This document shows positions 13,088-60,622 of a stretch of 64,000 nt of DNA, in pieces (position 1 is the stretch's first letter; each line of letters starts with the position of its first letter). A model generated the notes under the pieces. It worked only from the letters and a program-made list of their open reading frames with translations, was not told where the DNA came from and made no database searches. Position numbers and translations under genes: made by a program. The DNA is taken from positions 1 through 64,000 of IMG/VR virus record IMGVR_UViG_3300038441_001119; one strand, given 5' to 3'.

Positions 13088-13103
13088 CAAGTCTATATAG
13101 CAC
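13088..13103 (-). promoter_or_regulatory. Phage promoter motif GTGCTATATAGACTTG
   Basis: One of 11 copies; lies after a terminator and before a 5' hairpin. Confidence 0.75.
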
Positions 13104-13118
13104 GTAAAAGAAAGGAAT

Positions 13119-13150
13119 TACCCTCGACAGATTCACATCTGTCGAGGGTA
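13119..13150 (-). terminator. Intrinsic terminator
   Basis: 13-bp stem TACCCTCGACAGA/TCTGTCGAGGGTA plus T-tract. Confidence 0.75.
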
Positions 13151-13162
13151 ATCGAGATATGG

Positions 13163-13291
13163 TCAGAACCGGAATAGATCTCTATCTCGGAGCATTCGTT
13201 GGGTCCGCTCATAGCAATCCCTACATTGTCCCAGCATATAGATCTTCGTACGGTGACAGTGTATGCACTTGCGTTCAGGTTTCTTTGGCAT
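13163..13291 (-). CDS. 42-aa zinc-finger peptide (MPKKPERKCIHC...CRDC)
   Basis: CxxC...CxxC; ends just before the terminator. Confidence 0.5.
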   Translation of the reverse strand: MPKKPERKCIHCHRTKIYMLGQCRDCYERTQRMLRDRDLFRF

Positions 13292-13580
13292 TTTTCTGTT
13301 CTTTTTGTCTGCCTCCCCAATAGAACTTGATCCCTCGGGGGTTGTATGGTTTCTGTCTGAAACGAGAAGCATCCGCTAGCTTGGATACCCAGCCTAGCTT
13401 ATCCATCATACGCAGCATTGCCCTGAACGCATCATTGATACGCCCCTTACTATCTACCTGCGCTTCAATAATAAGCTTCCCATTATAGAAGACTCTGCAG
13501 CCCCATAGTCCCGTTTTAATGAGCGTGACTTTGGTGGTGATAGGATCAACATACGTGCTCTTGGTTTTACGCTTAGGCAT
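13275..13580 (-). CDS. Basic hypothetical protein
   Basis: Start MPKRKT, 4 nt after the upstream stop. Confidence 0.65.
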   Translation of the reverse strand: MPKRKTKSTYVDPITTKVTLIKTGLWGCRVFYNGKLIIEAQVDSKGRINDAFRAMLRMMDKLGWVSKLADASRFRQKPYNPRGIKFYWGGRQKEQKNAKET

Positions 13581-13584
13581 CGTT

Positions 13585-13989
13585 TTACAGTAAGTCCTCC
13601 ACAGTATAATGATCCGTAGGAAATCCCCTATGGAATGCCATACCACGAATAGCGTCTGTTATTGGCGCCCACATATGCCCGTCACTAATCGCCTTTATTT
13701 CAGGATGGGTCCAGATGTAGGTGCATCCTCCGTGGGACAAGGCAATAGCAACAACCTTGTTATCCGCATTGGAGGCTCCGATAATGGATTTGACCCTGTC
13801 GACCACCTTGGTTTTTACAGGTGCCAAATGAGACCATTCGTATGCTTGTGCGATGACTTTGAATTTCTCGAAGACATCGGCTCTTTGCATGAATCCGCTA
13901 ATCATTTCGTCGGATAGAACGACGATAGCTCTGGCTCTCTCAAAGCCCTCAGGAGTCGCAGGATCACGGTGTAGGACTTGTACCTTCAT
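13585..13989 (-). CDS. Hypothetical protein
   Basis: Start MKVQVL. Confidence 0.6.
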   Translation of the reverse strand: MKVQVLHRDPATPEGFERARAIVVLSDEMISGFMQRADVFEKFKVIAQAYEWSHLAPVKTKVVDRVKSIIGASNADNKVVAIALSHGGCTYIWTHPEIKAISDGHMWAPITDAIRGMAFHRGFPTDHYTVEDLL

Positions 13990-14434
13990 TGGGTGGGGTT
14001 GGTGGTTTCTGCAGGAGATGCAATGCCGTTGCTGCTGGACCTGGTACATCTGTAAGCAATGGGTCGATGTAGTGGATCTGCAGGAGATCTGCGATGTCAC
14101 TATGGCTCAACTGTAGCTTGTCATTGACTTGGATGAAATCGTAGGCTCCCTTGTTTCCCGGTGTACCGAAGTAAGGTTGATAATGCTTTCCTGAGGTAGC
14201 CCAACCAAAGTATGCCGATACGTGGGACACACGCCTCGTAGCATCTGGTTGCTCCTCTTTCATGACATCGAGCGCCACTTCCATACAGCAGCGGGTGAAG
14301 TAACCCGGTTTACCCGGGGATTCGTCGCAATGCTTTTTCCAAGCTCCACGACACTCCTTGCCATTGTTATCCTTGAGTGCTGTGTGGAGCTTTTGGTTGC
14401 GTTCCAGTTTCTGTTCCTTGGTGGGTTCTTCCAT
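13964..14434 (-). CDS. Hypothetical protein, paralogue of 15862-16350
   Basis: Shared RN..L..AL..NNGKE.R.AW.K, SA.FGW, ND.L.LSH.DIA. Confidence 0.75.
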   Translation of the reverse strand: MEEPTKEQKLERNQKLHTALKDNNGKECRGAWKKHCDESPGKPGYFTRCCMEVALDVMKEEQPDATRRVSHVSAYFGWATSGKHYQPYFGTPGNKGAYDFIQVNDKLQLSHSDIADLLQIHYIDPLLTDVPGPAATALHLLQKPPTPPNEGTSPTP

Positions 14435-14442
14435 ACTGTTGG

Positions 14443-14700
14443 TTATTTGCGTGTGAATTTTCTGCGGTTCTTTTTGTATTTGTATCTCGGAGGACGGCGG
14501 AGCAGGTCCATGAGAATTTTAACCAGCACACCTGTTGCTTCAGCAAGCTGGTCTATGAATTCTTTGGCTGCCTTGTTCCCCTCCTGATACCCCATGTAAG
14601 GGAAGATCTCCACAGGTTCACCACATCGGGTAACCTCTGTGGTACCTTCCCATGAAGTGTAAGTAATCTCGTAACCTTTGTATTGTGATGTGGAAATCAT
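14443..14700 (-). CDS. Hypothetical protein
   Basis: First gene after promoter 14723. Confidence 0.65.
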   Translation of the reverse strand: MISTSQYKGYEITYTSWEGTTEVTRCGEPVEIFPYMGYQEGNKAAKEFIDQLAEATGVLVKILMDLLRRPPRYKYKKNRRKFTRK

Positions 14701-14722
14701 TTGAGGAAGAGTTAGTGCTTCT

Positions 14723-14738
14723 CATTAATATATAGCAC
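14723..14738 (-). promoter_or_regulatory. Phage promoter motif GTGCTATATATTAATG (variant)
   Basis: Motif copy. Confidence 0.65.
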
Positions 14739-14761
14739 ACAGGTACAATGAGTTGCGGCAA

Positions 14762-15244
14762 TCAGAGGGCTGCAAACTCCAGTTTCTTTTTATCTATCTG
14801 TTCTTGTAACTGCGACTCCATCAAACTAAATAGCGCAGGGTTAGGAGCGATACAGGGATCAAATGACGATGGAGCCGCGCTATTGCAAACAAACACAAAC
14901 ACTTGCTTTCCAGAATTAACAGAGGACTGTAGTCGAGTTATGGACTTTTCCAGATTGGCAATATCTATCTCCAAACCTACTGCCTTCATGAAAGTTTCTT
15001 CAGATGCGTAAGAAGTAAACTCTTTCAGGAGTGTCGCCTTTCTATCCTCAAAGTAATTGCTCAGGCCCTCTACGTGGGTACGTGTGAACTTGACCTTTTT
15101 GAAAGAGTATGAATTTCTATGGAAGTCTACTCCCAATACCTCTGACGGTCTAAGAGTGACACCTGCGAGGTTGGTGACATTTGTTTCGACGATGTGAAGC
15201 TCGGATTTGATGTCCTTGAGCCTTTGAAGAGTTTCGTAGGTCAT
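14762..15244 (-). CDS. Coiled-coil hypothetical protein
   Basis: 160-aa ORF. Confidence 0.65.
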   Translation of the reverse strand: MTYETLQRLKDIKSELHIVETNVTNLAGVTLRPSEVLGVDFHRNSYSFKKVKFTRTHVEGLSNYFEDRKATLLKEFTSYASEETFMKAVGLEIDIANLEKSITRLQSSVNSGKQVFVFVCNSAAPSSFDPCIAPNPALFSLMESQLQEQIDKKKLEFAAL

Positions 15245-15266
15245 GTGTGGTAAAAGTTAGTCATAT

Positions 15267-15297
15267 GCCCTACTGGAGTGGGTAGTTCCAGTAGGGC
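15267..15297 (-). terminator. Putative terminator
   Basis: 11-bp stem GCCCTACTGGA/TCCAGTAGGGC. Confidence 0.55.
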
Positions 15298-15350
15298 TAC
15301 TTGGTTAGTTGTTAATGTAGGGTGAAATAGTTGTTAATCCTGCGGCGTAC

Positions 15351-15644
15351 TCACCTTCCGGCAGTGGTTGGAGGTACTGGTAAAACATACATTGAACGCG
15401 GGGATGCCAGATAGGTCTGCCCTGTCTGCGTGTTCACTATTTCGAACACTGCCTCAGCATCTCCCTCAGTGGTGGTTGCCTTCTTGGGAGTGACCGTATA
15501 GCTGGCAAGTGGCAGGACTGAAAGACGTGCTTGCGCTTGAGTCTTCCTGTCTATCTCCATGGCGTATGGATATGCCGCTATGATGATGCCAATAATGCAT
15601 ATGATCCAAATGAGGGTGACGATTAACTTGGGGATTGCTCTCAT
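15351..15644 (-). CDS. Membrane-anchored hypothetical protein
   Basis: N-terminal TM helix; start MRAIP. Confidence 0.6.
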   Translation of the reverse strand: MRAIPKLIVTLIWIICIIGIIIAAYPYAMEIDRKTQAQARLSVLPLASYTVTPKKATTTEGDAEAVFEIVNTQTGQTYLASPRSMYVLPVPPTTAGR

Positions 15645-15655
15645 GAGTCTGTTGG

Positions 15656-15862
15656 TTAGTTGGTTTCGGTGTGTCCGCACTTGGGGCATCCTATCTTTGC
15701 ATTGAGAAGGAGAATCCCCCTGCACAGCAAAGATGTATGCCCACAGCGTTCACAAGGTATATGAAGTACAGTTGCTCCCTGCCATGCGTCCAAAGAAAAG
15801 GAATCAGAAATCAGTTCCAGATCTTTCAACTCATCAGCAATGGATTGTATAAGACGTGACAT
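15656..15862 (-). CDS. Small zinc-ribbon protein
   Basis: CERC and CPKC. Confidence 0.6.
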   Translation of the reverse strand: MSRLIQSIADELKDLELISDSFSLDAWQGATVLHIPCERCGHTSLLCRGILLLNAKIGCPKCGHTETN

Positions 15863-16350
15863 CAGGCTGCTTTCTGATCTGCGATGAATTGTCTCAACGC
15901 TTTGGTGGTCAGTGAGAACGCGCCGGGGGTGAAAATCGGGGCAGGTATGCCGTCTGTGAAAGGTTTAACAAAACAAGCTCTTACCATAATAGCGATGTCC
16001 TCATGGGACAGCTCCAGATTGTCATTGAGTTGAAGCGGTCCCATGATTGGACTACCAAAGTGAGGCCAAGAATCGACCGGGCGGTTACTTAACATACCCC
16101 AGCCGAACCACGCGGATGCGCGATATATGCATTGATCTGGAGCTGCTTGCACAAAGGCATGGTCTACCGTAGCACCTTTATCTTCCCTCGCCCATACGTC
16201 GACCACCACCGTAAGGAAGCACCGACACTCATTATCACCGCTCTTCTTGCGCCAAGCGCATCTGGCTTCTTTTCCGTTATTCTCTTCAAGTGCAACGGCG
16301 AGCAGCTCATTGCGACGGGCGTATTCAAGTATTTCTTCTTTGGGGTTCAT
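15862..16350 (-). CDS. Hypothetical protein, paralogue of 13964-14434
   Basis: Start MNPKEE; the track start lies inside the promoter motif. Confidence 0.75.
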   Translation of the reverse strand: MNPKEEILEYARRNELLAVALEENNGKEARCAWRKKSGDNECRCFLTVVVDVWAREDKGATVDHAFVQAAPDQCIYRASAWFGWGMLSNRPVDSWPHFGSPIMGPLQLNDNLELSHEDIAIMVRACFVKPFTDGIPAPIFTPGAFSLTTKALRQFIADQKAA

Positions 16351-16378
16351 ACGTGTGTGGGAGGATTTGTTATCCTCA

Positions 16379-16392
16379 CAAGTATATAGCAC
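16379..16392 (-). promoter_or_regulatory. Phage promoter motif GTGCTATATACTTG
   Basis: Motif copy directly after a terminator. Confidence 0.75.
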
Positions 16393-16394
16393 AT

Positions 16395-16432
16395 AAAAAA
16401 GAAGAAGTGCCCGTCAGGGAGCACCTGACGGG
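16395..16432 (-). terminator. Intrinsic terminator
   Basis: Stem CCCGTCAGG/CCTGACGGG plus T-tract. Confidence 0.7.
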
Positions 16433-16449
16433 GTTACTTCTTTTAAACC

Positions 16450-17235
16450 CTAAAACGCAACAACGCGGGCTTTGTCCAACTGCTTGATGAAATAGTGCAG
16501 GTAACAAGGCATGATATGCGCTACCAATTCAGTGATAGGCATGGACAGCGATTGCACGAACACTTTGTCAATGGCAGCTTGGTCACCTTTGAACATAACC
16601 TTACCCACCATTTGCCGAAATCCAAGCATCTGGAACGGTGGTATTGTTTTCATCTTTTCTTCAACCTCCTTACGCAGTGTGGCAAGCTCCGTCATATCCT
16701 TCACTTTGACCACAGGACCATACAGACCACGCTGATTGGTTGTGGGTTCTTGTGCTAGGATATCGACAGGAGGTGCTTTGGATACTGTGATCTGCGGCTT
16801 GGAGGGTGCTGAGTGTTTCCATGTGTACAGCTCCTTTTTCTCAAGTGGACGAGCATATGCGCACTCAGACTTGATGTTGCTGCAGTATGGGCGACTAACG
16901 ATGGTGATCTCGTCGCACTCAAGATTGCAGATCCATCGGCGCCGGTTGTATGTGAAGTGAATCCTGACCGTACCTTCATAGAAGAGAACGAACCCTCTCG
17001 ACGTTACGATCTTTCCGTTATGTTCGTGCCTTACAGACACGACATCGCCTTCATAGATCATGCGGTCATTTTGGTCAATGATTCCCGTGGAACGATACAC
17101 CCGGTAGTCTTTTCTGGAAATAGCCTGTAAGCCTAAGGCATCCGGGATGTAGAGAACACCGTTGGAAGAAGCAAGGACATTGGGTACAAACCGTCCTGTC
17201 TTCTTATTGATCACTCTGAATGGGTTGATGTTCAT
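16450..17235 (-). CDS. YopX-domain protein (N-terminal half)
   Basis: STGIIDQNDRMIYEGDVV matches the YopX signature. Confidence 0.7.
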   Translation of the reverse strand: MNINPFRVINKKTGRFVPNVLASSNGVLYIPDALGLQAISRKDYRVYRSTGIIDQNDRMIYEGDVVSVRHEHNGKIVTSRGFVLFYEGTVRIHFTYNRRRWICNLECDEITIVSRPYCSNIKSECAYARPLEKKELYTWKHSAPSKPQITVSKAPPVDILAQEPTTNQRGLYGPVVKVKDMTELATLRKEVEEKMKTIPPFQMLGFRQMVGKVMFKGDQAAIDKVFVQSLSMPITELVAHIMPCYLHYFIKQLDKARVVAF

Positions 17236-17238
17236 AGG

Positions 17239-17385
17239 TCAGATGACTAGGTTCAATGCTTTCATCAACCCTAGGAAAATAACCAGAGTTATGAAGAAAC
17301 CGACAAACCGGAAAATCATACCGAGGGGCAGCCAATCCGGGGCTGCTTCCTCCCACTCATTGAGTTTGTTAAAAAAGTTTTTCAT
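17239..17385 (-). CDS. 48-aa membrane peptide
   Basis: Start MKNFF; one TM helix. Confidence 0.55.
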   Translation of the reverse strand: MKNFFNKLNEWEEAAPDWLPLGMIFRFVGFFITLVIFLGLMKALNLVI

Positions 17386-17438
17386 GTTATGAGCTAGTTC
17401 GTGTGTGTTGATTTTGTGCGTAGGGGAGTAGTCTCCTC

Positions 17439-17454
17439 CAAGTTTATATAGCAC
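17439..17454 (-). promoter_or_regulatory. Phage promoter motif GTGCTATATAAACTTG
   Basis: Motif copy after a terminator. Confidence 0.75.
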
Positions 17455-17456
17455 AT

Positions 17457-17500
17457 AAAAAAGAAATACTGCCCTCCACCAGTCAAGGCAGAGGGCAGTA
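17457..17500 (-). terminator. Intrinsic terminator
   Basis: Stem TACTGCCCTC/GAGGGCAGTA plus T-tract. Confidence 0.7.
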
Positions 17501-17503
17501 AGA

Positions 17504-17713
17504 TCACGTGAGCTGATTGGACCAGCGGGAGCGGAGTTGTCGTCTGATTTTGTTGCGAGTCGAGTGGATTCGACGTAACACTATGGGGTTATTGATGATG
17601 GGGCGAGGGCCTGTCGGCATCATTTCAACCTCAGCAAGCATGGCAGCCATGGATTCATAGCTGCGACCTACTTTGGTGAACCGACACTGTCTTGTAATGG
17701 AGAATCTTGCCAT
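17504..17713 (-). CDS. Small Arg-rich hypothetical protein
   Basis: 69-aa ORF. Confidence 0.55.
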   Translation of the reverse strand: MARFSITRQCRFTKVGRSYESMAAMLAEVEMMPTGPRPIINNPIVLRRIHSTRNKIRRQLRSRWSNQLT

Positions 17714-17761
17714 GTGTATGATAAAAGAAAACCCACCCTGTTGCTAGCAGGGTGGGTAGGA

Positions 17762-17980
17762 TTATTCGAAATAGTCGTAGGGCGGATGACCAGTAAACTG
17801 CTCAGTCGCACACCACGTTATCTCGACCGCGTAGCCGATACCGAAATTATTTATATGTCCGTAAAACAATCCGGCAGGTGTTTCCGCCAGCCAGTTGTAT
17901 GCGTCTATACAAGCGAAATCAGTCATCTCGCTACCACCGGGTATGTATTCCTGTACTGCTTCGATATATGTTGTTGCCAT
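17762..17980 (-). CDS. Small acidic hypothetical protein
   Basis: 72-aa ORF. Confidence 0.55.
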   Translation of the reverse strand: MATTYIEAVQEYIPGGSEMTDFACIDAYNWLAETPAGLFYGHINNFGIGYAVEITWCATEQFTGHPPYDYFE

Positions 17981-18021
17981 AGAGTAGGTTGATTTAGTTC
18001 TCTAGACACAACAACATGCTT

Positions 18022-18267: not shown

Positions 18268-18282
18268 GGTGAGAGAGGGGTG

Positions 18283-18308: not shown

Positions 18309-18313
18309 ATAGA

Positions 18314-21393: not shown

Positions 21394-21425
21394 GGTGTGC
21401 GTATTTCATGAGGACGTAATACCCT

Positions 21426-21441
21426 CAAGATTATATAACAC
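21426..21441 (-). promoter_or_regulatory. Phage promoter motif GTGTTATATAATCTTG
   Basis: Motif copy. Confidence 0.75.
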
Positions 21442-21444
21442 ATA

Positions 21445-21915
21445 TCAGCCTCTCTTATCATCAGGGAACATAGCATGAAGGATCACATCGAGGATCCTTA
21501 GCTTGTTGTCCAGCTGGTAGTAATAGTACTCGGAGAACCTTCGTTTGATGATCTGCGGCAGTGTCAGCTTGAGAGAGGGCCACCGCCACCACATAGGAAT
21601 CGCCGATACCTTAAATGGATCGTTGCATCCCTGCACATGGTAGGTGTCTTTCCCAAGAGCACAACAAATGGAAACCATCAGGCTGTGCGCACAGTCATAG
21701 TACTTCTGCTGAGTGAACGAAATGATCAGCAGATTATCATCCCGGTTGATGTTCAAGATGTCCTCAGGTAGCTCCCATTTGTTGGCACGCAAGCGCAGGC
21801 CAACAAATATGTGCCCGAAGAGTTCTTGGAAGTCCGGGGTAAACAGAGAGAACAGCTTGTTCTTCTGATCGAGTGTGACGTTAATTGCTAGGTGGTTGTA
21901 TTTCGCTTTGGCCAT
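21445..21915 (-). CDS. Hypothetical protein
   Basis: 156-aa ORF after promoter 21947. Confidence 0.65.
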   Translation of the reverse strand: MAKAKYNHLAINVTLDQKNKLFSLFTPDFQELFGHIFVGLRLRANKWELPEDILNINRDDNLLIISFTQQKYYDCAHSLMVSICCALGKDTYHVQGCNDPFKVSAIPMWWRWPSLKLTLPQIIKRRFSEYYYYQLDNKLRILDVILHAMFPDDKRG

Positions 21916-21946
21916 AAAGATAAATAGTTTTGTGAGTTAATACCCA

Positions 21947-21962
21947 CAAAACTATATAACTC
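21947..21962 (-). promoter_or_regulatory. Phage promoter motif GAGTTATATAGTTTTG (variant)
   Basis: Motif copy. Confidence 0.6.
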
Positions 21963-21986
21963 CCACAGCTCGGCTATTGCTCGATT

Positions 21987-29630: not shown

Positions 29631-29665
29631 GGATATGTTGGTTAATGAATAAGGATGTAACTCCT

Positions 29666-29681
29666 CAAGAATATATAACGC
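29666..29681 (-). promoter_or_regulatory. Phage promoter motif GCGTTATATATTCTTG
   Basis: Motif copy. Confidence 0.75.
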
Positions 29682-29862
29682 AGGGTGGGGGTTATTTACC
29701 TGCAGGTAAAAAAGAGACTGCATACCCGGTGCCTGTCTAACACCGGGTATGCTCACAAATCATGAATAAAATACAAAAAGAAAAATCAGTGTGCGTTGGT
29801 TAAGTTACTTCATTGTTAGATGAGTTTTATCCCTTCTATTATATCCGGAGTTGGCTACAAAT

Positions 29863-31404: not shown

Positions 31405-31504
31405 GATGAATGTGTAGGGGTTAAAAAGAATGAGTGCAGGGAGGACATGTCCCAAAAGCCTCCCTGCACCGGTTGTTGTCTTCCGTTATGGAAGCACAGA
31501 TGTG

Positions 31505-31762
31505 CTACCCAAGAATATATAGCACGATGTTCTTGATTGTTGCGAGGTGTCGCAGAGCAAGCTGGATCAGTATAAACAGAAGTGCTGCTATCCAGATGGA
31601 CTGTCTCATCCAAAAGAATCTACCAGCATTACCGAATGTGCGGTCCGGACAACGGGCGCAGCCTACTGCTGTAATCGCAATAGCGTTAATAGCCAGCAAG
31701 AGCCAGTTGGTTTCGGGTTTACCGTTGATGGCAGCAACACTGGATATAGAGAAGCTGATCAT
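31505..31762 (-). CDS. Small membrane protein (start uncertain)
   Basis: Hydrophobic helices; 3' end overlaps the promoter motif. Confidence 0.45.
   Translation of the reverse strand: MISFSISSVAAINGKPETNWLLLAINAIAITAVGCARCPDRTFGNAGRFFWMRQSIWIAALLFILIQLALRHLATIKNIVLYILG
31510..31525 (-). promoter_or_regulatory. Phage promoter motif GTGCTATATATTCTTG
   Basis: Motif copy. Confidence 0.75.
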
Positions 31763-32430: not shown

Positions 32431-34311
32431 TTAGTTGGCGTTGTACTGTCCGTCGACAGGTTCCAGCGGCCAGAGACCCTGCAGGGTAGGATGCTGGTTC
32501 CGAGCGTCGAGCGATGCCTTGACATAGTCAGTGTACGGTTGACCACGACGGGCAACGCGTTGTTCTTCGAGCCGCTTGCGGACATCGTCGAGCGTACACG
32601 TATTGTATTGCTTGCTGTCCTTGAAGATGAGCTGGTAAGCGCAGTTCTCCAATTCTTGCATCGTGGCCTTGTCCTTGAGGTAGGGGACGCCGTCCTTCGA
32701 GAAGAACACAGCGGGGATACCTTCAGCCGACTTCTTGGTACCGTCATCGGTAGCAGGGTTCTTCGACAGAGCGATGGGCTTGTCACCAAAGATACCGAAC
32801 GTCGCTTTGACAGCCATGGCGTGTGTGTCACGGGTGACGAACTGATAGCTGTAGCTTCCGATACCGAAGACGATATTCGTCGAGCAGAAGCCGAGAGCCT
32901 TCATCTGCTCAAGGATCGACTGGCAACGCTGAAGCGTGATCGAGTCACCGTAGATCAGACCAACGAATGGATTGATCTCCCGGTAGCCCTTCGCATTGAC
33001 CTTTCCGCCGAACTCATCCCAGAGACACTCCAGCGATCCGCGAAGGACCGGGGTGTCGACGACAGGAACCAGCTCGTAGTAGTCGTGCTGCGAGTTGGCC
33101 TTGATCTCGTAAGGCTGCCCCTTGTGCCGGACATGGAAGTAGCCGAGAACACGGATCTTCTCCAGAGCGAGTTTGAGGATTTCGTCTTCGATGCGAGTAC
33201 CGACGGCGATTTCCTCAACGTCATAGATCGCCTTGAGAGGATAGGCTTCGCCGCAGACGATCTTGATTGGATCTCCACTGTCAGGGCGGAACACCACCTT
33301 GGCAGGCTGTCCGTTTTGATTGGGCTTCCGGTCGAGGATGATGGGCTTGAGACGCTTGAGACCTTCCGTCATCACCTTCCAGTAGTTGTTGGTGTCCGAG
33401 ACAGCCGACACGATACCGGTAGGGTACTTCTTCGAGAAGAGGTTCTCCATGAAGCGCATCTCACCTTCCCACTTGTCAGTACCGCCGCCGTAGACAGCGA
33501 TACCAGCTTGGGTAACCGAGTGTTCCGTGGCCCGCACCGAGGTACCAATAAGGCTTTCAGTCGGGTAGTAGTTCCGAGTGAATGGGACCGCAGGCATGGT
33601 GTCCGTACCGCAGAAGCTGGTAAGGTGCGACATGCCGGTAAGACACGAGGCTTCCAGACCCTGCATACCTCGCATCGAGAAGTCGTGACCTTGGAATGGA
33701 ACAAAACCCATGTCGCCGCCGGTGTCCTCGCAGAAGCGATCCATCAGTGTACGATACAGATGCGCCGTGGTTGCAGCCGTGACACAGGGCCACATGTTCT
33801 GCGACAACGAGGTCTCCTGATGGTTGACAAGCCAGAAGAAGCGGCTGTCGGTGTTGTAGATCACCATCATCGGAACACGAAGCGGAGTGAGTGTACCTTC
33901 GGGAAGCGCCCAGATAGCCAGAGGCAGATAGCCGAGATCGTGCAGTTCACGTACGTGGTTGTCTCCGACAACACCGGGACCATAGAAGGCGTCGATGTTC
34001 TTGCGGTACAACAGTACGGCGATCTCCTTGTCGCACGAGAAGAAGGCTTCATCCCAGACACCGAGTAGCTGGTACTGGACCCAATACTGGCTACCGAAAG
34101 CAACCACCTCGGTAAGACCGGGATGGCGGGTTGCGCGAGCAGTCAGGTTGGCCATGATCAACTGCGTGTTGTCAGGGTGCTGTGGAAGGTGGTCACCTTT
34201 GTAGGCATCACATCCGGTCATGGGGTCTTGCCACGGGCGGTAGACCTTGTTGTTTGGAGTACGGCGAGCCTTCGGTTTGTCGGCTGCGATCTCTTTGGCG
34301 ATGTTTGTCAT
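32431..34311 (-). CDS. nadV: Nicotinamide phosphoribosyltransferase-like protein (Nampt/Namat)
   Basis: DAYKGDH, GYLPL..ALPEGT, HDFSMRG, GTDT, ATEHSV, VSDT, RPDSGDP, GLIYGDSIT, NIVFGIGS, RDT. Confidence 0.92.
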   Translation of the reverse strand: MTNIAKEIAADKPKARRTPNNKVYRPWQDPMTGCDAYKGDHLPQHPDNTQLIMANLTARATRHPGLTEVVAFGSQYWVQYQLLGVWDEAFFSCDKEIAVLLYRKNIDAFYGPGVVGDNHVRELHDLGYLPLAIWALPEGTLTPLRVPMMVIYNTDSRFFWLVNHQETSLSQNMWPCVTAATTAHLYRTLMDRFCEDTGGDMGFVPFQGHDFSMRGMQGLEASCLTGMSHLTSFCGTDTMPAVPFTRNYYPTESLIGTSVRATEHSVTQAGIAVYGGGTDKWEGEMRFMENLFSKKYPTGIVSAVSDTNNYWKVMTEGLKRLKPIILDRKPNQNGQPAKVVFRPDSGDPIKIVCGEAYPLKAIYDVEEIAVGTRIEDEILKLALEKIRVLGYFHVRHKGQPYEIKANSQHDYYELVPVVDTPVLRGSLECLWDEFGGKVNAKGYREINPFVGLIYGDSITLQRCQSILEQMKALGFCSTNIVFGIGSYSYQFVTRDTHAMAVKATFGIFGDKPIALSKNPATDDGTKKSAEGIPAVFFSKDGVPYLKDKATMQELENCAYQLIFKDSKQYNTCTLDDVRKRLEEQRVARRGQPYTDYVKASLDARNQHPTLQGLWPLEPVDGQYNAN

Positions 34312-42249: not shown

Positions 42250-42277
42250 AACATAAACAAAACAAAGGAGAGGTCAA
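42250..42277 (-). promoter_or_regulatory. sigma70-like promoter TTGACC-16-TATGTT
   Basis: 9 nt upstream of ATG 42240. Confidence 0.5.
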
Positions 42278-42298
42278 CCATAAAAATGCTGTCCTCTC

Positions 42299-42314
42299 CA
42301 AGTTTATATAGCGC
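42299..42314 (-). promoter_or_regulatory. Phage promoter motif GCGCTATATAAACTTG
   Basis: Motif copy. Confidence 0.75.
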
Positions 42315-42339
42315 AAAAGCGCACTCTGTTGCAACTACC

Positions 42340-53332: not shown

Positions 53333-53757
53333 AGCAAATTATTTTTAGGCAGACCTGTCCTTAAACCCTTTGGCTATTTTTGTTTTAGCAGTCGCTTTGT
53401 CCTTGGTCTTCGTTTCGCCATCCTCTGTCCTGTTACTTTATCACCTTCACTTTCATCTAGCCTCTGCGCGAGTAGCGAGCGAGAGAGAGCGGAAGCGGCG
53501 TTAGGCCGCGATGCGCAGGGCGTTATCCGTCGCAGACTTCGTCTGGCGACACGTTGTCGACTCTAAATCGACTTTTGGGGGCCCCGAGGCGATGCCTCAC
53601 CCCTCAAAAGCTCGATTTTTAAAAGGGTTATTTTTAATTGTGTCCCCTTTGTAGACAGTATAGAGAACACTTACATTGTTTGAACTTAATTACATTTTGT
53701 TTGTAACCTCTTTACTGGAGCAGAAACATTGTAAGCATTTTCTCTTGGAATACAGAT

Positions 53758-53785
53758 ATTATACCATAACTTATTTCCATGTCAA
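53758..53785 (-). promoter_or_regulatory. Perfect-consensus sigma70 promoter TTGACA-16-TATAAT
   Basis: TTGACA at 53780-53785, TATAAT at 53758-53763; points into about 490 nt of non-coding DNA. Confidence 0.8.
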
Positions 53786-55441: not shown

Positions 55442-55443
55442 GG

Positions 55444-56648: not shown

Positions 56649-56722
56649 ATGATAAAGGATACGATGCGTGCTGCGACGTCGAACATGTCGTCGAGAAGTT
56701 TTCGAATGATGTCAGCGTCCAT
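56486..56722 (-). CDS. Small membrane protein
   Basis: One TM helix; overlaps the 5' end of the next ORF. Confidence 0.45.
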   Translation of the reverse strand: MDADIIRKLLDDMFDVAARIVSFIICLLIALIVLGFFAVRSCQKAVYFEKELNRRKTQQTTTPPKMEVHATTTEGHAE

Positions 56723-56858
56723 TGTACTTTTCGTAGGCTTTGCGTTCCAGTTTTCTGCCTGTATGCATACCAATACCGCAACCAAGAATGAACGAGGATA
56801 CAGCAATGAACAGCACAAGCAGGACAGCCTCTCGGGTGGATAGGATGTTGAGTTTCAT
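56712..56858 (-). CDS. 48-aa membrane peptide (MKLNILSTREAVLLVLFIAVSSFILGCGIGMHTGRKLERKAYEKYNGR)
   Basis: Translated by hand; overlaps the upstream stop. Confidence 0.55.
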   Translation of the reverse strand: MKLNILSTREAVLLVLFIAVSSFILGCGIGMHTGRKLERKAYEKYNGR

Positions 56859-57088
56859 TTATTCTTGTATTTCATGTCCGCGTACAAGCAGAGCAGAATG
56901 AAAAAGGGACCGAACAGGTAGAGCAGGATGTATAGCGTAAGCTTCAACCTCCTTACCGACCATTTGGATTTCATGGACATTGCGTCCAACCTGTGCGGCA
57001 TTCCGTTAACTGCTGCCATCACATGCGATCCACAGTATATGTTGAACAGCAGGTACAGGAGCAGTATTAGCGTTATGGTGTGGGACAT
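56855..57088 (-). CDS. Small membrane protein
   Basis: Two TM helices; start MSHTI. Confidence 0.6.
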   Translation of the reverse strand: MSHTITLILLLYLLFNIYCGSHVMAAVNGMPHRLDAMSMKSKWSVRRLKLTLYILLYLFGPFFILLCLYADMKYKNK

Positions 57089-57342
57089 GGTTCGTTTTTC
57101 TTCAGGTGTTTGCGTGCCAATTGTTTCCAACCTTCTCCCCAAGTGCGCATACTTTTGAACGCTTCCCTGATGTTCTCCATTTCATCAGGGAGGTTCACCA
57201 GACTTGCATAGATGTCGCTGGTGCGTTCGTCCTCGATCTCCATGTTGTCGAGAGCAAACTCCAGCTTGTCTATAATGGCATCAATAGTAGGGCACTGGGG
57301 CGGAGGCTGTGCTTCGATATTATACTGATCTTCCGATGTCAT
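57073..57342 (-). CDS. Small coiled-coil protein
   Basis: CP-x-ID...E-x-IR-x5-R-x-WG motif; ATGA overlap. Confidence 0.65.
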   Translation of the reverse strand: MTSEDQYNIEAQPPPQCPTIDAIIDKLEFALDNMEIEDERTSDIYASLVNLPDEMENIREAFKSMRTWGEGWKQLARKHLKKNEPCPTP

Positions 57343-57821
57343 TTCGGCTTGGCTTCCGAGGTTAACCTTGCTTGCAGACAATCCAACATGTCGTTGAGAT
57401 CCTCCACGTCGTAGGTCAGCTCACTATAGCACCCGTGCCTGAGCAACCAGTCGTCATACCATACGAAGGCGATCACTCTTCTAGTGAACTCACGGACTCC
57501 GTATTTGGGGTCATGAGCGAACATGTAGTAGTACGGTGTGTTCTTCTTAATGGATAACTGCACACCGAATTCACGCTGGAGGATCTCAGCCCAGTTGTCT
57601 TTTTCATGTTCCACACATTCAGGATGTGCATAAACCCAGAAGCCTAGGGCATCGCACTTGTCCGCGTTGGTCACATGAAACGGATAACTGATAGGCACAC
57701 CATTCTCGGAAGCAAACTCGGCAGGGCTGTATCCGAGGTCCCACCCTTCATGCATACAGTCAGTATGGTTCAGTACGAGATCCGCAAGTTCCAGTAGGTT
57801 AAGTTTTTGGTCGAGGGTCAT
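57339..57821 (-). CDS. Hypothetical protein, paralogue of the 55713-56648 C-terminal domain
   Basis: LLELADLVLNH, CDALGFW. Confidence 0.7.
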   Translation of the reverse strand: MTLDQKLNLLELADLVLNHTDCMHEGWDLGYSPAEFASENGVPISYPFHVTNADKCDALGFWVYAHPECVEHEKDNWAEILQREFGVQLSIKKNTPYYYMFAHDPKYGVREFTRRVIAFVWYDDWLLRHGCYSELTYDVEDLNDMLDCLQARLTSEAKPK

Positions 57822-57840
57822 AGGGAGGTGCTGTAAATGG

Positions 57841-58215
57841 TTAATCGGATAACAGTTCGTCCCAGCCTTTGGGGCGGGATTTTTCTACCATCTTCAAACA
57901 AGGGGTACAGTGATTGAACCAAAAGATGCTAACCTGCTCGTTGACTCTTTTGAATTCGTTCGGATTATCCTTATCCTTTTCGATAGCAGCGGCTTCACCG
58001 GTGATTTCCTCTATGAAAGTCCAGAGCAGAAGCCTGTTCTCGTAGTTACCATTCTCCCGTGCCAGATCGTACAGCTTTGCGAATTTCTCGCGATGCTCCT
58101 TGGGGATGATGTACGTGTGAAGCTTTGGTGACGCAGGCTTCGGTTTCCTGAAGAAAAGCTTGGCCCAAAAGCCTTGCTTAATTACCGGGGGTGTTGTCGG
58201 GAGGGTGGTGTCCAT
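57841..58215 (-). CDS. Hypothetical protein
   Basis: 124-aa ORF. Confidence 0.65.
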   Translation of the reverse strand: MDTTLPTTPPVIKQGFWAKLFFRKPKPASPKLHTYIIPKEHREKFAKLYDLARENGNYENRLLLWTFIEEITGEAAAIEKDKDNPNEFKRVNEQVSIFWFNHCTPCLKMVEKSRPKGWDELLSD

Positions 58216-58726
58216 CTGTTTCTGGGAGAGTAGGGACTTCAGGTACGTCTGGTCCTTTGAGATCCTGCAGTTCAGCTTTCAGTTTGTCCAAGGCGTCAGC
58301 CTGTTGCTTGTTAAGCTCAGCGGCCTTGTCGAGTTTTGCCTGCAGCTTCCTTTCGGATTCTGTCAGAGCTACGATTTTGTAATACCGCTGCGAGGATTCG
58401 TCTCTTGCAGCATCTCGCTCGCGTTCGATGGTGGCTATCTGCACTGCATTCCGAATCATCCTGTTGACCTCGCCCTGTGAAACACTAGTGCCTGCCTGAT
58501 CTGGAATCATTGCATCGCGAATCTTGACAATGTCACACGAGGCGTGGATAGCCTGAATGACTTGTTTGATCAGTTTGCACACGCAGAGGATGGCTACAAT
58601 ACCTACGCTATAAGGTACGATGATCTTCAGGAATTCCAGAACGATCCAGACGATTGCGAAGTCTTTGACTCCTTCGGCGGTACCTTGAACTACTTCAAGG
58701 ATCGTTTTCATTTTTGCGAAGTCCAT
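58178..58726 (-). CDS. Membrane-anchored coiled-coil protein
   Basis: TM segment followed by a heptad region. Confidence 0.65.
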   Translation of the reverse strand: MDFAKMKTILEVVQGTAEGVKDFAIVWIVLEFLKIIVPYSVGIVAILCVCKLIKQVIQAIHASCDIVKIRDAMIPDQAGTSVSQGEVNRMIRNAVQIATIERERDAARDESSQRYYKIVALTESERKLQAKLDKAAELNKQQADALDKLKAELQDLKGPDVPEVPTLPETDGHHPPDNTPGN

Positions 58727-58743
58727 ATTGGGTAACGGTGAGA

Positions 58744-59139
58744 TTAGTCGATAAGTTCAACCCAGCCGGTTGGTGCGTCCACGACGCGCATAAAGATAGC
58801 CAGAGGTGCATTACATCCTTTGTAGTTTCTCTCACGCAAATAGAAGATACCGATAGGATCCGCAGGGTTCTTGCGATCCGCATTGATGATCTTCAGCAGG
58901 TAGGAGTTGAGGTTGATTACCGCCCTTTCGAAGTTGTGTGGAGTAATGTGCGAATGGTTCAGGTTACGTTCCATCGCATTCTTCTTATGTTCCTCCTGCG
59001 CCTTTCTTTCGATAAGCGAGGTTACTTCAGGGATGTGTTTCTCAGGGATGAGGTATGTCGCATGAGTTTTTGGTTTCACCTTGTCCTCCTCTTTCGGCGG
59101 AGTAGATGGGGGTCTACCGAACGCTAGTATGTTTATCAT
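58744..59139 (-). CDS. Hypothetical protein
   Basis: 131-aa ORF, first after promoter 59248. Confidence 0.6.
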   Translation of the reverse strand: MINILAFGRPPSTPPKEEDKVKPKTHATYLIPEKHIPEVTSLIERKAQEEHKKNAMERNLNHSHITPHNFERAVINLNSYLLKIINADRKNPADPIGIFYLRERNYKGCNAPLAIFMRVVDAPTGWVELID

Positions 59140-59247
59140 GTGTATGTTGTTGGGGGTAAAAACAATTCAGGGGAACCGGCATGCATTGCAGTACCGGTTC
59201 CCCTTAGGAATTAATCACCAATTTCTTGTAGACAACTGTGTTACCTA

Positions 59248-59263
59248 CAAGATTATATAACTC
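59248..59263 (-). promoter_or_regulatory. Phage promoter motif GAGTTATATAATCTTG
   Basis: Motif copy. Confidence 0.7.
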
Positions 59264-59283
59264 AAACCACCCTCTGGTTGCTA

Positions 59284-59535
59284 TTACTTCTTAACCACCT
59301 TGGAGAGAGTCCCTTCGCCATCATCTTTATATTCTTGTAGAGGGACGAACTCGACCTTGGGAAAAAGCTTCTTGTAATTCTTAGCTTCAGGAGTCTTATC
59401 CGTGAAGGTGCAGGTCTGTTGACCATCTTGGAAAAAGACAATACCGACCTTACCATCCATATCCACCAGTTCAATGAAACGAAACTCGGGAGGCAGTTGG
59501 ATGTAATCGCCGTTTGTCTTTCTTAGTCTGATCAA
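59284..59535 (-). CDS. Hypothetical protein
   Basis: 83 aa; ATGA overlap. Confidence 0.7.
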   Translation of the reverse strand: MIRLRKTNGDYIQLPPEFRFIELVDMDGKVGIVFFQDGQQTCTFTDKTPEAKNYKKLFPKVEFVPLQEYKDDGEGTLSKVVKK

Positions 59536-60071
59536 AATGCCTGCATTTGTTGATTCATCTCCTGATCCTTAAGGAAGGACTGAACCACACGGGTTACTTG
59601 TTCGAAGTCCTGCTCAAGAGCTTCAATGCGAGCTTGCAACTCTTGGTTGCCCTCTTCCTTCTCTTGCTGCAGTTGATCGAATCCTGCCTTAAGCTCTTCT
59701 ATATGTCCAGAGATTTCCTCAACTGCTTGTGCCACTTCTTGAATCACCTGTACGAGCTGTGCGAGATCTTCTTCGCTGACCCCTGAGACCATAGGATCGC
59801 CACCGCCCTGTGGGGGAGGCCCTGCAGGAGCGCCCTGAGGAGGAGCACCTCCCATCATAGCAGGGTCCATGGGTTGTCCAGTGGCTGGATCAATTGGCAT
59901 GCCTGTAGCAGGATCCACTGGAGGACCACCAGCAGGAGCACCCTGAGGAGGAGCGCCTCCCGGGGGCATGCCGCCACCCGGAGGAACCATGGGCTGGAAT
60001 GCCTTCTTGACAATCAATTCCTTCAGTTCCTTCATGGCGCTGATGCTATCTTCAATTTGTTTCCTATCCAT
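59532..60071 (-). CDS. Pro/Gly/Met-rich low-complexity plus coiled-coil protein (possible scaffold or virion protein)
   Basis: GGAPPQGAPAG twice, DPATG twice, acidic coiled-coil C-terminus. Confidence 0.8.
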   Translation of the reverse strand: MDRKQIEDSISAMKELKELIVKKAFQPMVPPGGGMPPGGAPPQGAPAGGPPVDPATGMPIDPATGQPMDPAMMGGAPPQGAPAGPPPQGGGDPMVSGVSEEDLAQLVQVIQEVAQAVEEISGHIEELKAGFDQLQQEKEEGNQELQARIEALEQDFEQVTRVVQSFLKDQEMNQQMQAF

Positions 60072-60087
60072 AGGGCGACTTCTAAGT

Positions 60088-60116
60088 AGTTTACATTTTT
60101 TTAACTACTGTGTCAC
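60088..60116 (-). promoter_or_regulatory. sigma70-like promoter GTGACA-17-TAAACT
   Basis: 16 nt upstream of ATG 60071. Confidence 0.55.
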
Positions 60117-60164
60117 GGGTTTATGATAGGTAAAGAAAAGGGACCCAGTAGGTCCCTTTTCGTT

Positions 60165-60581
60165 TCAATTGGCTACAGCCGCTACCTGAGGTTTATGTTC
60201 CTTCAGATATCCCTCGATGTAGCTCGGGTAATGTATTGGGTTCGCGATAGGCTGAACTTCTGCGTTCAAATATGACACGAAGAAGCGTTGCCCGTTGCGA
60301 GGATCGTCAGCAGTGAGTAGCAGAAATCCAGTTCTCTTTTCGTACTGGACGTAGTGCTTATTTCCGATCTCATCGACCGTTGTGGAATACAATGTATCCA
60401 AGGTCTCACACTTATTTGGAATAAATGTACTGGGACCGACCGGATGTTTGATAGTGTACGTGAAGTACTCGTTCTTGGCTTTCTCTTCGGCGTTCGATAC
60501 GTGAAGGATCAGCTTGACGGTTCCGAAGACCGTAGCAAGTCCTAGAAAAATCAAAAAGGCGAATGATTTATTTGAGTTCAT
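60165..60581 (-). CDS. Membrane-anchored hypothetical protein
   Basis: N-terminal TM; follows promoter 60607. Confidence 0.65.
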   Translation of the reverse strand: MNSNKSFAFLIFLGLATVFGTVKLILHVSNAEEKAKNEYFTYTIKHPVGPSTFIPNKCETLDTLYSTTVDEIGNKHYVQYEKRTGFLLLTADDPRNGQRFFVSYLNAEVQPIANPIHYPSYIEGYLKEHKPQVAAVAN

Positions 60582-60606
60582 AGCTTTGTGTTGAATAGGG
60601 GTTACT

Positions 60607-60622
60607 CAAAGCTATATACCCT
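60607..60622 (-). promoter_or_regulatory. Phage promoter motif AGGGTATATAGCTTTG (variant)
   Basis: Motif copy with a 5' hairpin. Confidence 0.55.

What the first reader, a model, noticed from the sequence alone, without database searches (positions are those of the whole stretch)
13088..60622. Conserved phage promoter GYGYTATATAWWCTT-G coupled to a 5' stem-loop (11 copies)
Seen at 13088, 14723, 16379, 17439, 21426, 21947, 29666, 31510, 42299, 59248 and 60607, all on the minus strand, at operon heads and often right after a terminator, with no conserved -35. The terminal G of the motif begins a hairpin, e.g. GGAGAGC-ACAAC-GCTCTTC (13088), GAGG-GTATTACGT-CCTC (21426), GG.AGCAC-ATCT-GTGCT.CC (31510), GTAGGTAAC-ACA-GTTGTCTAC (59248). 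Inference: a promoter for the phage RNAP with +1 at that G, and a 5' hairpin of variable sequence but conserved structure that protects transcripts from 5'-end-dependent RNases or aids recognition.
Basis: partly seen in the sequence, partly recalled or inferred. Interest (0 to 1): 0.7.

Follow-up and report, generated by a model that had tools for sequence, protein, structure and literature searches.

The report
Phage promoter with 5' RNA hairpin
An uncultured 212-kb soil phage that carries its own bacterial-type RNA polymerase and sigma-like factor repeats a roughly 45-bp two-part promoter about 20 times, and most copies run straight into a short hairpin at the predicted start of the RNA; the signal is real and shared with related phages but has never been tested at the bench.

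Summary
The motif is real. All 11 sites exist, all lie on the minus strand, and chance gives under one. Across the whole 212,352-bp phage record there are about 20 sites, none on the plus strand.

The full consensus is GCAAYA-N12-GYGY-TATATA-NN-YTTG, about 30 bits. GCA sits at a fixed distance in 17 of 21 sites.

The hairpin that starts at the last G is statistically real. It shows more G·U than A·C wobbles and covaries in relatives. That points to an RNA structure.

The phage encodes one split multisubunit RNA polymerase and a sigma70-family protein. The same promoter occurs in related uncultured phages of 38-54% GC, both Shine-Dalgarno-less and Shine-Dalgarno-using. It is absent from relatives with more distant sigma.

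My best reading is an early or middle promoter read by the phage's own sigma and polymerase. Transcription would start at the conserved T|G step and give a 5'-terminal stem-loop, most likely an mRNA stabiliser.

The main rival is a host promoter of the Bacteroidota type, because TAnnYTTG matches their -7 element.

No RNA data were available, so the start site, the polymerase and the hairpin's function are all inferred.

The parts
13070..13121 (-). Promoter unit 1. GTAATT (-35-like) at 13121-13116, TATATA at 13099-13094, T|G at 13089/13088, hairpin GGAGAGC-ACAAC-GCTCTTC at 13088-13070. A gene starts 44 nt after the G.
14703..14756 (-). Promoter unit 2, a weaker variant ending TTAATG. GCAACT, TATATA at 14734-14729, G at 14723, imperfect hairpin.
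16361..16410 (-). Promoter unit 3. GCACTT, TATATA at 16388-16383, G at 16377 (not 16379), hairpin GAGGAT-AACAA-ATCCTC.
17423..17472 (-). Promoter unit 4. GCAGTA, TATATA at 17450-17445, G at 17439, hairpin GG.AGGAG..CTCC.CC.
21410..21459 (-). Promoter unit 5. The upstream element is degenerate (GATAAG). TATATA at 21437-21432, G at 21426, hairpin GAGGGT-ATTAC-GTCCTC.
21932..21980 (-). Promoter unit 6. GCAATA, TATATA at 21958-21953, G at 21947, hairpin GTGGGT-ATTA-ACTCAC with one G.U pair.
29651..29699 (-). Promoter unit 7. GTAAAT, TATATA at 29677-29672, G at 29666, hairpin GAGGA-GTTACA-TCCTT.
31490..31543 (-). Promoter unit 8. GCAACA, TATATA at 31521-31516, G at 31510, hairpin GGG.AGCAC-ATCT-GTGCT.CC.
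42267..42332 (-). Promoter unit 9. GCAACA, TATATA at 42310-42305, G at 42299, long-loop hairpin GGAGAGG-(19 nt)-CCTCTCC.
59228..59281 (-). Promoter unit 10. GCAACC, TATATA at 59259-59254, G at 59248, hairpin GTAGGTAAC-ACA-GTTGTCTAC with two G.U pairs.
60593..60640 (-). Promoter unit 11. GCAATA, TATATA at 60618-60613, G at 60607, weak 5-bp hairpin. It lies 6 nt after the beta' N-terminal gene.
13116..13153 (-). Terminator-like hairpin of 17 bp with a T-run. Its 3' arm and T-run double as the -35 element and spacer of promoter unit 1. Similar terminators lie at 16410-16432, 17467-17500 and 29720-29752.
60624..61844 (-). Gene for the beta' N-terminal part of the phage multisubunit RNA polymerase (Pfam RNA_pol_Rpb1_2). 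It is a candidate subunit of the enzyme that reads the promoter.
4721..8197 (-). Gene for the beta' C-terminal part of the phage RNA polymerase (Rpb1 domains 4 and 5), interrupted by an intein (Hint plus LAGLIDADG).

Best explanation
This is a phage-specific, sigma-type two-part promoter. It marks the early or middle transcription units of an uncultured jumbo phage that encodes a bacterial-type multisubunit RNA polymerase.

Recognition. A phage sigma70-family protein (G000:172535-173311, minus strand, outside the window) works with the phage's split beta/beta' polymerase. By analogy with Salmonella phage Arash, this holoenzyme may be delivered in the virion. It binds GCAAYA as a -35-like element and, 16 bp downstream, TATATA as a -10-like element, with an invariant G three bases before TATATA in the extended -10 position.

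Start site. Transcription starts at or next to the invariant T|G step, 5-6 nt after TATATA.

Hairpin. The first 15-21 nt of the RNA fold at once into a stem-loop of variable sequence. This 5'-terminal stem-loop most likely shields the triphosphate end from 5'-end-dependent decay, as other 5' stem-loop stabilisers do. It may also help the polymerase leave a very tightly bound promoter.

What is shown and what is inferred. Shown: the motif, its strand and position bias, the upstream element, the hairpin statistics, the wobble asymmetry and covariation, the sigma and polymerase genes, and conservation in relatives. Inferred: which polymerase reads the promoter, the exact +1, the timing class, virion packaging, and what the hairpin does.
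For: Motif:
- 8 strict hits against 0.85 expected, all on the minus strand.
- About 20 sites in the whole genome and none on the plus strand.
- 29.7 bits of information; GCA at a fixed distance in 17 of 21 sites.
- Sites are intergenic with short leaders, and four window sites follow terminators directly.

Polymerase and sigma:
- One set of polymerase genes.
- The sigma-like protein is homologous to Arash gp10. A profile of it matches regions 2-3 of SigA/RpoD in solved structures at E=1e-11.
- The G004 homologue passes Pfam's Sigma70_r3 cut-off.
- Arash packages beta, beta' and sigma in its virions (PMC10585845).
- The sigma gene lies inside the structural block, and no motif site occurs in the 164-212 kb structural region.

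Specificity:
- The same promoter occurs in 19 IMG/VR stretches from syntenic relatives at 38-54% GC, partly at matching positions.
- It is present where sigma is 40-43% identical (G004, G011). It is absent or variant where sigma is 32% identical or less (G012-G019, Arash).
- It is shared by a Shine-Dalgarno-less phage (G000) and a Shine-Dalgarno-using one (G004).
- The generic host -7 motif is not enriched elsewhere in the phage.
- All 10 downstream genes tested have no PHROG match, as is common for early genes.

Hairpin:
- Folding energy and start-register statistics.
- The register rises sharply at -1/0 relative to the G.
- 29 G.T against 8 A.C wobbles in the stems (p=0.003).
- Covariation and a conserved G.U pair in relatives; 0 of 500 shuffles reach the observed score.
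Against: - No transcript data. No RNA run could be listed, so +1, the polymerase and the timing are all untested.
- TAnnYTTG equals the Bacteroidota sigma A -7 element, and the phage's leaders lack Shine-Dalgarno sequences. Host RNA polymerase could therefore read these sites, starting about 5 nt inside the hairpin.
- Read as a -10 hexamer, TATATA has A where sigma70-family hexamers have the nearly invariant T at -7.
- Motif presence tracking sigma similarity could simply reflect shared ancestry or shared host range.
- The low-GC relatives that carry the motif (G001, G002, G003, G005) are 26-67% complete fragments in which no polymerase or sigma gene was found.
- The hairpin is weak or absent in 5-7 of the 20 sites and in most sites of G004 and G011, so it is not obligatory.
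- The whole-window comparison of sense and antisense folding energy was not significant (p=0.14).
Confidence: 0.55

Rival explanations
1. These are host-type early promoters. The host is a Bacteroidota bacterium whose housekeeping sigma A reads TAnnTTTG at -7 (here TA-NN-YTTG) plus an upstream element. The phage sites are unusually strong, uniform versions read by host RNA polymerase right after injection. The start would then lie about 5 nt after the G, so the hairpin's 5' arm is largely untranscribed and the inverted repeat needs another explanation.
For: - The last 8 nt of the motif match the Bacteroidota -7 consensus, and the spacing to the upstream element (20 bp) fits the -33/-7 layout (PMC6847099).
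- In the low-GC relatives the element is a perfect TAAATTTG.
- G000 leaders are depleted of Shine-Dalgarno motifs, 4.6% against 12.8% random, as in Bacteroidota.
- The 14-mer is about 2.7-fold over its reversed control in two Bacteroidota MAGs.
Against: - The upstream element is GCAAYA, not TTTG.
- The base at -8 is C in half of the strong sites, and G occurs at -10/-9 in 5 of 12. Both are near-forbidden in Flavobacterium promoters.
- Weak sites lose the TTT but keep TATATA and TG.
- Generic TAnnTTTG is not enriched at other phage genes.
- The motif is shared with an SD-using relative and with islands in Verrucomicrobiota and Eremiobacterota MAGs.
- This reading does not explain a hairpin register that begins exactly at the G, nor the G.U excess.
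- No pyrimidine-purine step exists at the predicted start in G000 or G004.
Confidence: 0.25
2. The promoter is real, but the hairpin acts during transcription rather than as an RNA stabiliser. It could be a nascent-RNA element that modifies the polymerase, giving antitermination of the put or nut type so that early transcripts read through the many terminators. It could also promote sigma release and promoter escape, or be bound by a phage protein.
For: - The hairpin is promoter-proximal, RNA-level and conserved in structure.
- The genome has many intrinsic terminator-like sites: 32 against 16.9 expected in 19.5 kb.
- A promoter of about 30 bits is expected to bind tightly and escape slowly. 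This last point is inference.
Against: - Loops and stems vary freely in sequence and size (loops of 3-19 nt), unlike boxB or put.
- Some promoters and whole relatives lack the hairpin.
- No N-like or Q-like protein was identified, and none was searched for.
Confidence: 0.12
3. This is a repeated non-promoter DNA element, such as a small mobile repeat or a replication, packaging or recombination site, that happens to lie between genes.
For: It is a repeat of about 45 bp adjoining an inverted repeat. The same core is also found next to tRNA genes in bacterial MAGs.
Against: - Only the promoter-like positions are conserved, while spacers and hairpins differ in sequence.
- Orientation follows the genes strictly, and sites sit 19-136 nt before start codons.
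- There are no flanking duplications or terminal repeats. Conservation follows a -35/-10 geometry.
Confidence: 0.03

Closest known systems
T7-group class III promoters with the phi10 leader (23-bp promoter, transcripts beginning GGGAGA and folding into a 5' stem-loop that stabilises the mRNA). This comparison rests on my own knowledge.
   Same: A highly uniform phage-specific promoter. Transcription starts with a purine run. A hairpin is formed by the very first transcribed bases. The units are often placed after terminators in a genome transcribed in one direction.
   Different: T7 uses a single-subunit polymerase and one contiguous promoter block. Here the layout is two-part (-35-like, 16 bp, -10-like with an extended -10 G), and the genome encodes a multisubunit polymerase and a sigma-like factor.
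Early promoters of phiKZ-like jumbo phages, read by a virion-packaged multisubunit RNA polymerase (PMC11512511, PMC7598289)
   Same: A long conserved early promoter, conserved around -10, -20 and -30, placed before small genes of unknown function and read, on this hypothesis, by an injected phage polymerase.
   Different: phiKZ polymerases are highly diverged and have no sigma. Here the polymerase parts hit Pfam Rpb1 and Rpb2 domains, there is only one set, and a sigma70-family protein is present. No promoter-coupled 5' hairpin is described in that paper.
Salmonella phage Arash and the 'mReC' lineage of phages with a bacterial-type multisubunit polymerase (PMC10585845, PMC7481178)
   Same: Homologous beta/beta', sigma, portal, terminase and capsid genes. 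Arash carries beta, beta' and sigma in its virions.
   Different: Identity is only 22-32%. Arash and Vibrio phage D69 lack this motif. Neither paper reports promoters for this lineage. Here the polymerase is split into at least five scattered genes, one with an intein.
Bacteroidota housekeeping promoter, -33 TTTG / -7 TAnnTTTG (PMC6847099)
   Same: TA-NN-YTTG at the 3' end of the motif, about 20 bp from an upstream element, with leaders lacking Shine-Dalgarno sequences.
   Different: The upstream element is GCAAYA. The additional invariant GYGYTATA is not part of the host consensus. C at -8 and G at -10/-9 are tolerated. The motif occurs in an SD-using relative and in non-Bacteroidota MAGs.
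5'-terminal stem-loop mRNA stabilisers (E. coli ompA leader, B. subtilis ermC and phage SP82 5' stabilisers). This comparison rests on my own knowledge.
   Same: A stem-loop that begins within 0-1 nt of the predicted 5' end, of variable sequence, followed by an unstructured leader.
   Different: Here it is coupled systematically to one promoter class across many genes and across phages. Its stabilising function was not tested.

Membership tests
sigma70-family two-part promoter (-35 / -10, extended -10) | Two conserved elements at a fixed spacing of 16-18 bp | tested here: met
   GCAAYA lies exactly 16 bp before TATATA. GCA is at that position in 17 of 21 sites.
sigma70-family two-part promoter (-35 / -10, extended -10) | -10 hexamer with A at position 2 and T at position 6 | tested here: not met
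   A at position 2 is invariant, but position 6 of TATATA is an invariant A. If TAnnYT is taken as the hexamer instead, T at position 6 is present in 15 of 21 sites.
sigma70-family two-part promoter (-35 / -10, extended -10) | A cognate sigma factor encoded or available | tested here: met
   A 258-aa protein at G000:172535-173311. Its profile matches SigA/RpoD regions 2-3 at E=1e-11, and the G004 homologue passes Pfam's Sigma70_r3 cut-off.
sigma70-family two-part promoter (-35 / -10, extended -10) | Transcripts start 6-8 nt after the -10 element | not testable with these tools
   No RNA run could be listed. The only evidence is indirect: the conserved T|G step and the hairpin register.
Bacteroidota sigma A promoter (-33 TTTG / -7 TAnnTTTG) | -7 element TAHHTTTG with T at -8 and no G at -10/-9 | tested here: inconclusive
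   The match to TAnnTTTG is perfect in 6 of the G000 sites and in nearly all sites of the low-GC relatives. In G000, C at -8 occurs in half of the strong sites and G at -10/-9 in 5 of 12.
Bacteroidota sigma A promoter (-33 TTTG / -7 TAnnTTTG) | -33 element TTTG | tested here: not met
   The conserved upstream element is GCAAYA.
Bacteroidota sigma A promoter (-33 TTTG / -7 TAnnTTTG) | Restricted to elements living in Bacteroidota hosts | tested here: not met
   The same motif occurs in an SD-using relative (G004) and in tRNA-adjacent islands of Verrucomicrobiota and Baltobacteraceae MAGs. MAG binning is a caveat.
5'-terminal stem-loop mRNA stabiliser | The stem begins within a few nt of the RNA 5' end | tested here: inconclusive
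   The stem starts at the G in 13 of 20 sites, and the register rises sharply at -1/0. Whether that G is the 5' end is not known.
5'-terminal stem-loop mRNA stabiliser | The structure forms in RNA and is under selection | tested here: met
   29 G.T against 8 A.C wobbles (p=0.003). Compensatory changes and a conserved G.U pair in 14 related sequences; 0 of 500 shuffles reach the observed score.
5'-terminal stem-loop mRNA stabiliser | Removing the stem shortens mRNA half-life | not testable with these tools
   This needs an experiment.
N4-type hairpin promoter (virion single-subunit polymerase) | A hairpin with a 5-7 bp stem and 3-nt loop lies upstream of +1 and is itself the recognition element | tested here: not met
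   Here the hairpin lies downstream of all conserved positions. Loops are 3-19 nt and stems 4-9 bp of free sequence.
nut/boxB or put antitermination RNA | Conserved loop or stem sequence recognised by a protein or by the polymerase | tested here: not met
   No sequence is conserved in the loops among the 20 G000 hairpins.

The most novel reading that the evidence does not exclude
The promoter is the private signal of the phage-encoded sigma and polymerase of this uncultured lineage, and other mobile elements have copied it. Nearly the same core (GCAAYA-N12-GYGYTATATA-NNYTTG followed by a hairpin) heads small tRNA-adjacent islands. These islands are present in 1-3 copies per genome in Verrucomicrobiota and Baltobacteraceae MAGs, in front of a small conserved ORF or a sigma-region-4-like ORF. 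The islands could be satellites or infection sensors that stay silent until a phage of this kind brings its polymerase into the cell.
Probability: 0.12. Interest if true: 0.8.

Novelty: new variant of a known kind. Interest (0 to 1): 0.55.

Why it matters
Phages of this lineage carry a bacterial-type RNA polymerase and a sigma-like factor. They are known almost only from metagenomes, and in the papers I could search no promoter has been reported for them.

A 30-bit two-part promoter conserved across relatives gives a concrete, testable recognition sequence for that enzyme. It also gives a way to mark early transcription units in uncultured genomes. If confirmed, it would be a compact orthogonal promoter and sigma pair.

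The systematic coupling to a 5'-terminal hairpin, with covariation, suggests that these phages build RNA-end protection or an escape aid into the promoter unit itself. Finding the same core at tRNA-adjacent islands in other phyla hints at elements that listen for this polymerase.

Tried and rejected
- No near-identical phage exists in the GenBank phage set.
- The only cultured relatives are Arash and Vibrio phages D69, D148 and D181, at 22-32% identity. Arash and D69 were scanned and lack the motif.
- RNA evidence: no RNA run could be listed.
- 23 loci with beta' N-terminal homologues at 35-39% identity show neither the motif nor an obvious repeated 9-mer.
- A single-protein search for sigma relatives found nothing. 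The three-sequence alignment found 10.
- Sense against antisense folding energy over whole windows was not significant (p=0.14). I replaced it with the symmetric wobble count.
- The sigma-like ORF of the islands shows no detectable similarity to the phage sigma.
- PHROGs gave nothing for 10 promoter-proximal genes.
- A sigma70-consensus scan finds fewer sites than shuffles do, 11 against 21.3. Ordinary E. coli-type promoters are therefore not the explanation.
- I considered and rejected an N4-like hairpin promoter, nut/put elements, and a mobile repeat (see Membership tests and Rival explanations).

Full report
**What the window is.** The window is the first 64 kb of a 212,352-bp IMG/VR virus record (G000, rated complete) assembled from soil metagenomes. 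A simple codon-based gene call puts 217 of 223 genes on the minus strand. The phage has no near relative among GenBank phages.

Its only cultured relatives are distant: Salmonella phage Arash and Vibrio phages D69, D148 and D181, at 22-32% protein identity. It belongs with the phages that encode a bacterial-type multisubunit RNA polymerase, a lineage called mReC in PMC7481178.

**Checking the observation.** The pattern GYGYTATATAWWCTT with up to two mismatches gives 8 hits, all on the minus strand. Shuffles give 0.85 on average, and none of 100 reaches 8.

Across the whole genome the matrix finds about 20 sites scoring over 10 on the minus strand and none on the plus strand. They run from 13,099 to 163,399, where the coordinate is the first T of TATATA. 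They are intergenic and lie 19-136 nt before start codons.

Four of the 11 window sites directly follow strong terminator-like hairpins. In three of these, the terminator's 3' arm and T-run double as the upstream element and spacer of the promoter.

One claim is wrong. There is a conserved upstream element, GCAAYA, exactly 16 bp before TATATA, with GCA in place in 17 of 21 sites. The full consensus is GCAAYA-N12-GYGY-TATATA-NN-YTTG, about 30 bits over 20 sites. Weaker sites replace YTTG with NNTG, but every site keeps TATATA and the final TG.

**The hairpin.**
- Windows starting at the final G fold at -5.8 kcal/mol on average. Random windows give -2.8 and windows upstream of genes give -2.5 (Mann-Whitney p about 1e-6).
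- A stem of at least 5 bp starts exactly at the G in 13 of 20 sites, against 17.7% of random positions (p=3.7e-6).
- Over 64 non-redundant sites from this phage, its relatives and the MAG hits, the number of sites with a stem rises sharply at -1/0 relative to the G: 10 at -2, 21 at -1 and 25 at 0.
- When G.T and A.C mismatches are allowed on equal terms, the stems contain 29 G.T and 8 A.C, against an expected G.T share of 0.55 (p=0.003). This asymmetry points to a structure on the sense strand, which means RNA. A symmetric DNA feature or a protein operator would not show it.
- In 14 homologous leaders of low-GC relatives, the stem shows compensatory changes at three pairs and a conserved G.U pair. 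None of 500 shuffles reaches the observed covariation.
- The hairpin is not universal. It is weak or missing in 5-7 of the 20 sites. In the relatives G004 and G011 most sites lack it, and G004 has a conserved GAnnCCCC instead.

**The transcription machinery.** The genome has one polymerase set, split into at least five scattered genes when mapped against Arash gp206 and gp216. These are 116147-117595, 115374-116147, 81642-83561, 60624-61844 and 4721-8197. The last carries an intein with Hint and LAGLIDADG domains.

A 258-aa protein at 172535-173311 is homologous to Arash gp10. A three-sequence profile of this protein matches regions 2.2-3.1 of primary sigma factors among solved structures at E=1e-11. 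The G004 homologue passes Pfam's Sigma70_r3 threshold.

In Arash, beta, beta' and sigma are abundant virion proteins (PMC10585845). In G000 the sigma gene also lies inside the structural block, roughly 165-212 kb by homology with the Arash capsid and other Arash structural proteins (the terminase at 151 kb and the portal at 107 kb lie outside it). That 48-kb block has no motif site. The ten promoter-proximal genes I tested have no PHROG match, as is common for early genes.

**Relatives.** An exact-pattern scan of IMG/VR found 19 stretches. All show the same layout, mostly followed by a hairpin. They come from syntenic relatives at 38-54% GC, and some promoters sit at matching positions, for example after the homologues of 163425-164015 and 102449-102943.

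Motif presence follows sigma similarity:

| Genome | Sigma identity to G000 | Motif |
|---|---|---|
| G011 | 43% | 5 oriented sites |
| G004 | 40% | 5 oriented sites |
| G012, G013, G014 | 31-32% | none, or a variant |
| G015, G019, Arash | 26% or less | none |

The phages that share the motif differ in how their genes start translation. G000 avoids Shine-Dalgarno motifs, whereas G004 is enriched for them at 0.45 against 0.20 random.

**The main rival.** The last eight bases, TA-NN-YTTG, equal the -7 element of Bacteroidota housekeeping promoters. In Flavobacterium the start site lies about 5 nt after that G (PMC6847099). G000's leaders without Shine-Dalgarno sequences suggest a Bacteroidota host. 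On this reading the start would fall inside the hairpin's 5' arm.

Several points count against it:
- The upstream element is not TTTG.
- C at -8 and G at -10/-9 are common.
- Weak sites lose the TTT but keep TATATA.
- Generic TAnnTTTG is not enriched at other phage genes.
- The motif is shared with an SD-using relative.
- The motif appears in non-Bacteroidota MAGs.
- T|G is the only pyrimidine-purine step conserved in every lineage, which start GAGAG..., GTACGG... and GAAGCCCC... respectively.

I therefore favour recognition by the phage sigma and a start at or next to the G. Both remain inferences.

**Genome-wide scan of bacteria and archaea.** The strict pattern occurs in only 17 stretches of 596 Gb. 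Several cluster in Verrucomicrobiota and Baltobacteraceae MAGs. There it occurs 1-3 times per genome, close to the level of a reversed control pattern. It lies next to tRNA genes and is followed by a hairpin, a Shine-Dalgarno-type leader, and either a small conserved ORF or an ORF resembling sigma region 4.

One copy is a remnant of about 1 kb inside a true chromosomal contig. So the motif is not a general promoter of those bacteria. It may belong to small integrated elements that share the phage signal.

**Verdict.** It is a two-part promoter of about 45 bp coupled to an RNA hairpin at the predicted 5' end, and it is conserved in an uncultured phage lineage with its own sigma and polymerase. 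It is a new variant of known kinds, namely phage-specific promoters and 5' stem-loop leaders. The start site, the polymerase, the timing class and the hairpin's function still need experiments.

Noticed in passing
window 4721-8197 (-): The beta' C-terminal polymerase gene carries an intein with a homing endonuclease (Hom_end_hint, Hint and LAGLIDADG_3 at about residues 566-810 of 1158).
   Followed up: partly
G000: 116147-117595, 115374-116147, 81642-83561, window 60624-61844, window 4721-8197: The polymerase that Arash encodes in two genes (gp206, gp216) is split here into at least five genes scattered over 110 kb. The role of the neighbouring 619-aa gene at 83568-85427 was not determined.
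   Followed up: partly
window 61845-61870; G000 85428-85445 and 173312-173330: The beta' N-terminal gene, the 83568-85427 gene and the sigma gene share ATACAAG(G/T) a few bases before the start codon, with a GTAATAG-like box about 20 nt upstream in two of them. This may be a second promoter or leader class for the transcription genes.
   Followed up: partly
genome-wide, e.g. window 9941, 13064, 14445, 15658, 25867, 29006, 29644, 34321: TAACCAAC(A) lies 0-25 nt before many start codons, often with TAA as the stop of the previous gene. It occurs 30 times on the sense strand and 11 on the antisense. Leaders are rich in C and A, poor in G and depleted of Shine-Dalgarno motifs. This may be a Shine-Dalgarno-independent initiation or re-initiation signal.
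   Followed up: partly
window 10376, 34374, 46783, 53764 and G000 114045, 126974, 129616, 165168, 208951: GTATAAT occurs 10 times on the sense strand, 9 of them intergenic. This may be another promoter class.
   Followed up: no
window 53738-53770 (-): A near-perfect E. coli-type promoter, TTGACA-16 bp-TATAAT with a TG two bases before the -10 hexamer. It is isolated and could be chance.
   Followed up: no
L078-L094, L124, L125 (MAG contigs of Verrucomicrobiota and Baltobacteraceae): The same promoter core plus a hairpin heads tRNA-adjacent islands, 1-3 copies per genome. It sits before a small ORF (MPRKGYYSPPLRRDL...) followed by a PD-(D/E)XK nuclease, or before an ORF resembling sigma region 4. 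One copy is a short remnant beside urease genes.
   Followed up: partly
window 32431-34311 (-): A nicotinamide phosphoribosyltransferase gene for NAD salvage (phrog_448, E=1.6e-155).
   Followed up: no
G004 sites (L035, L071-L077): In this relative the promoter is followed by a conserved GAnnCCCC(TC) instead of a hairpin. Its meaning is unknown.
   Followed up: no
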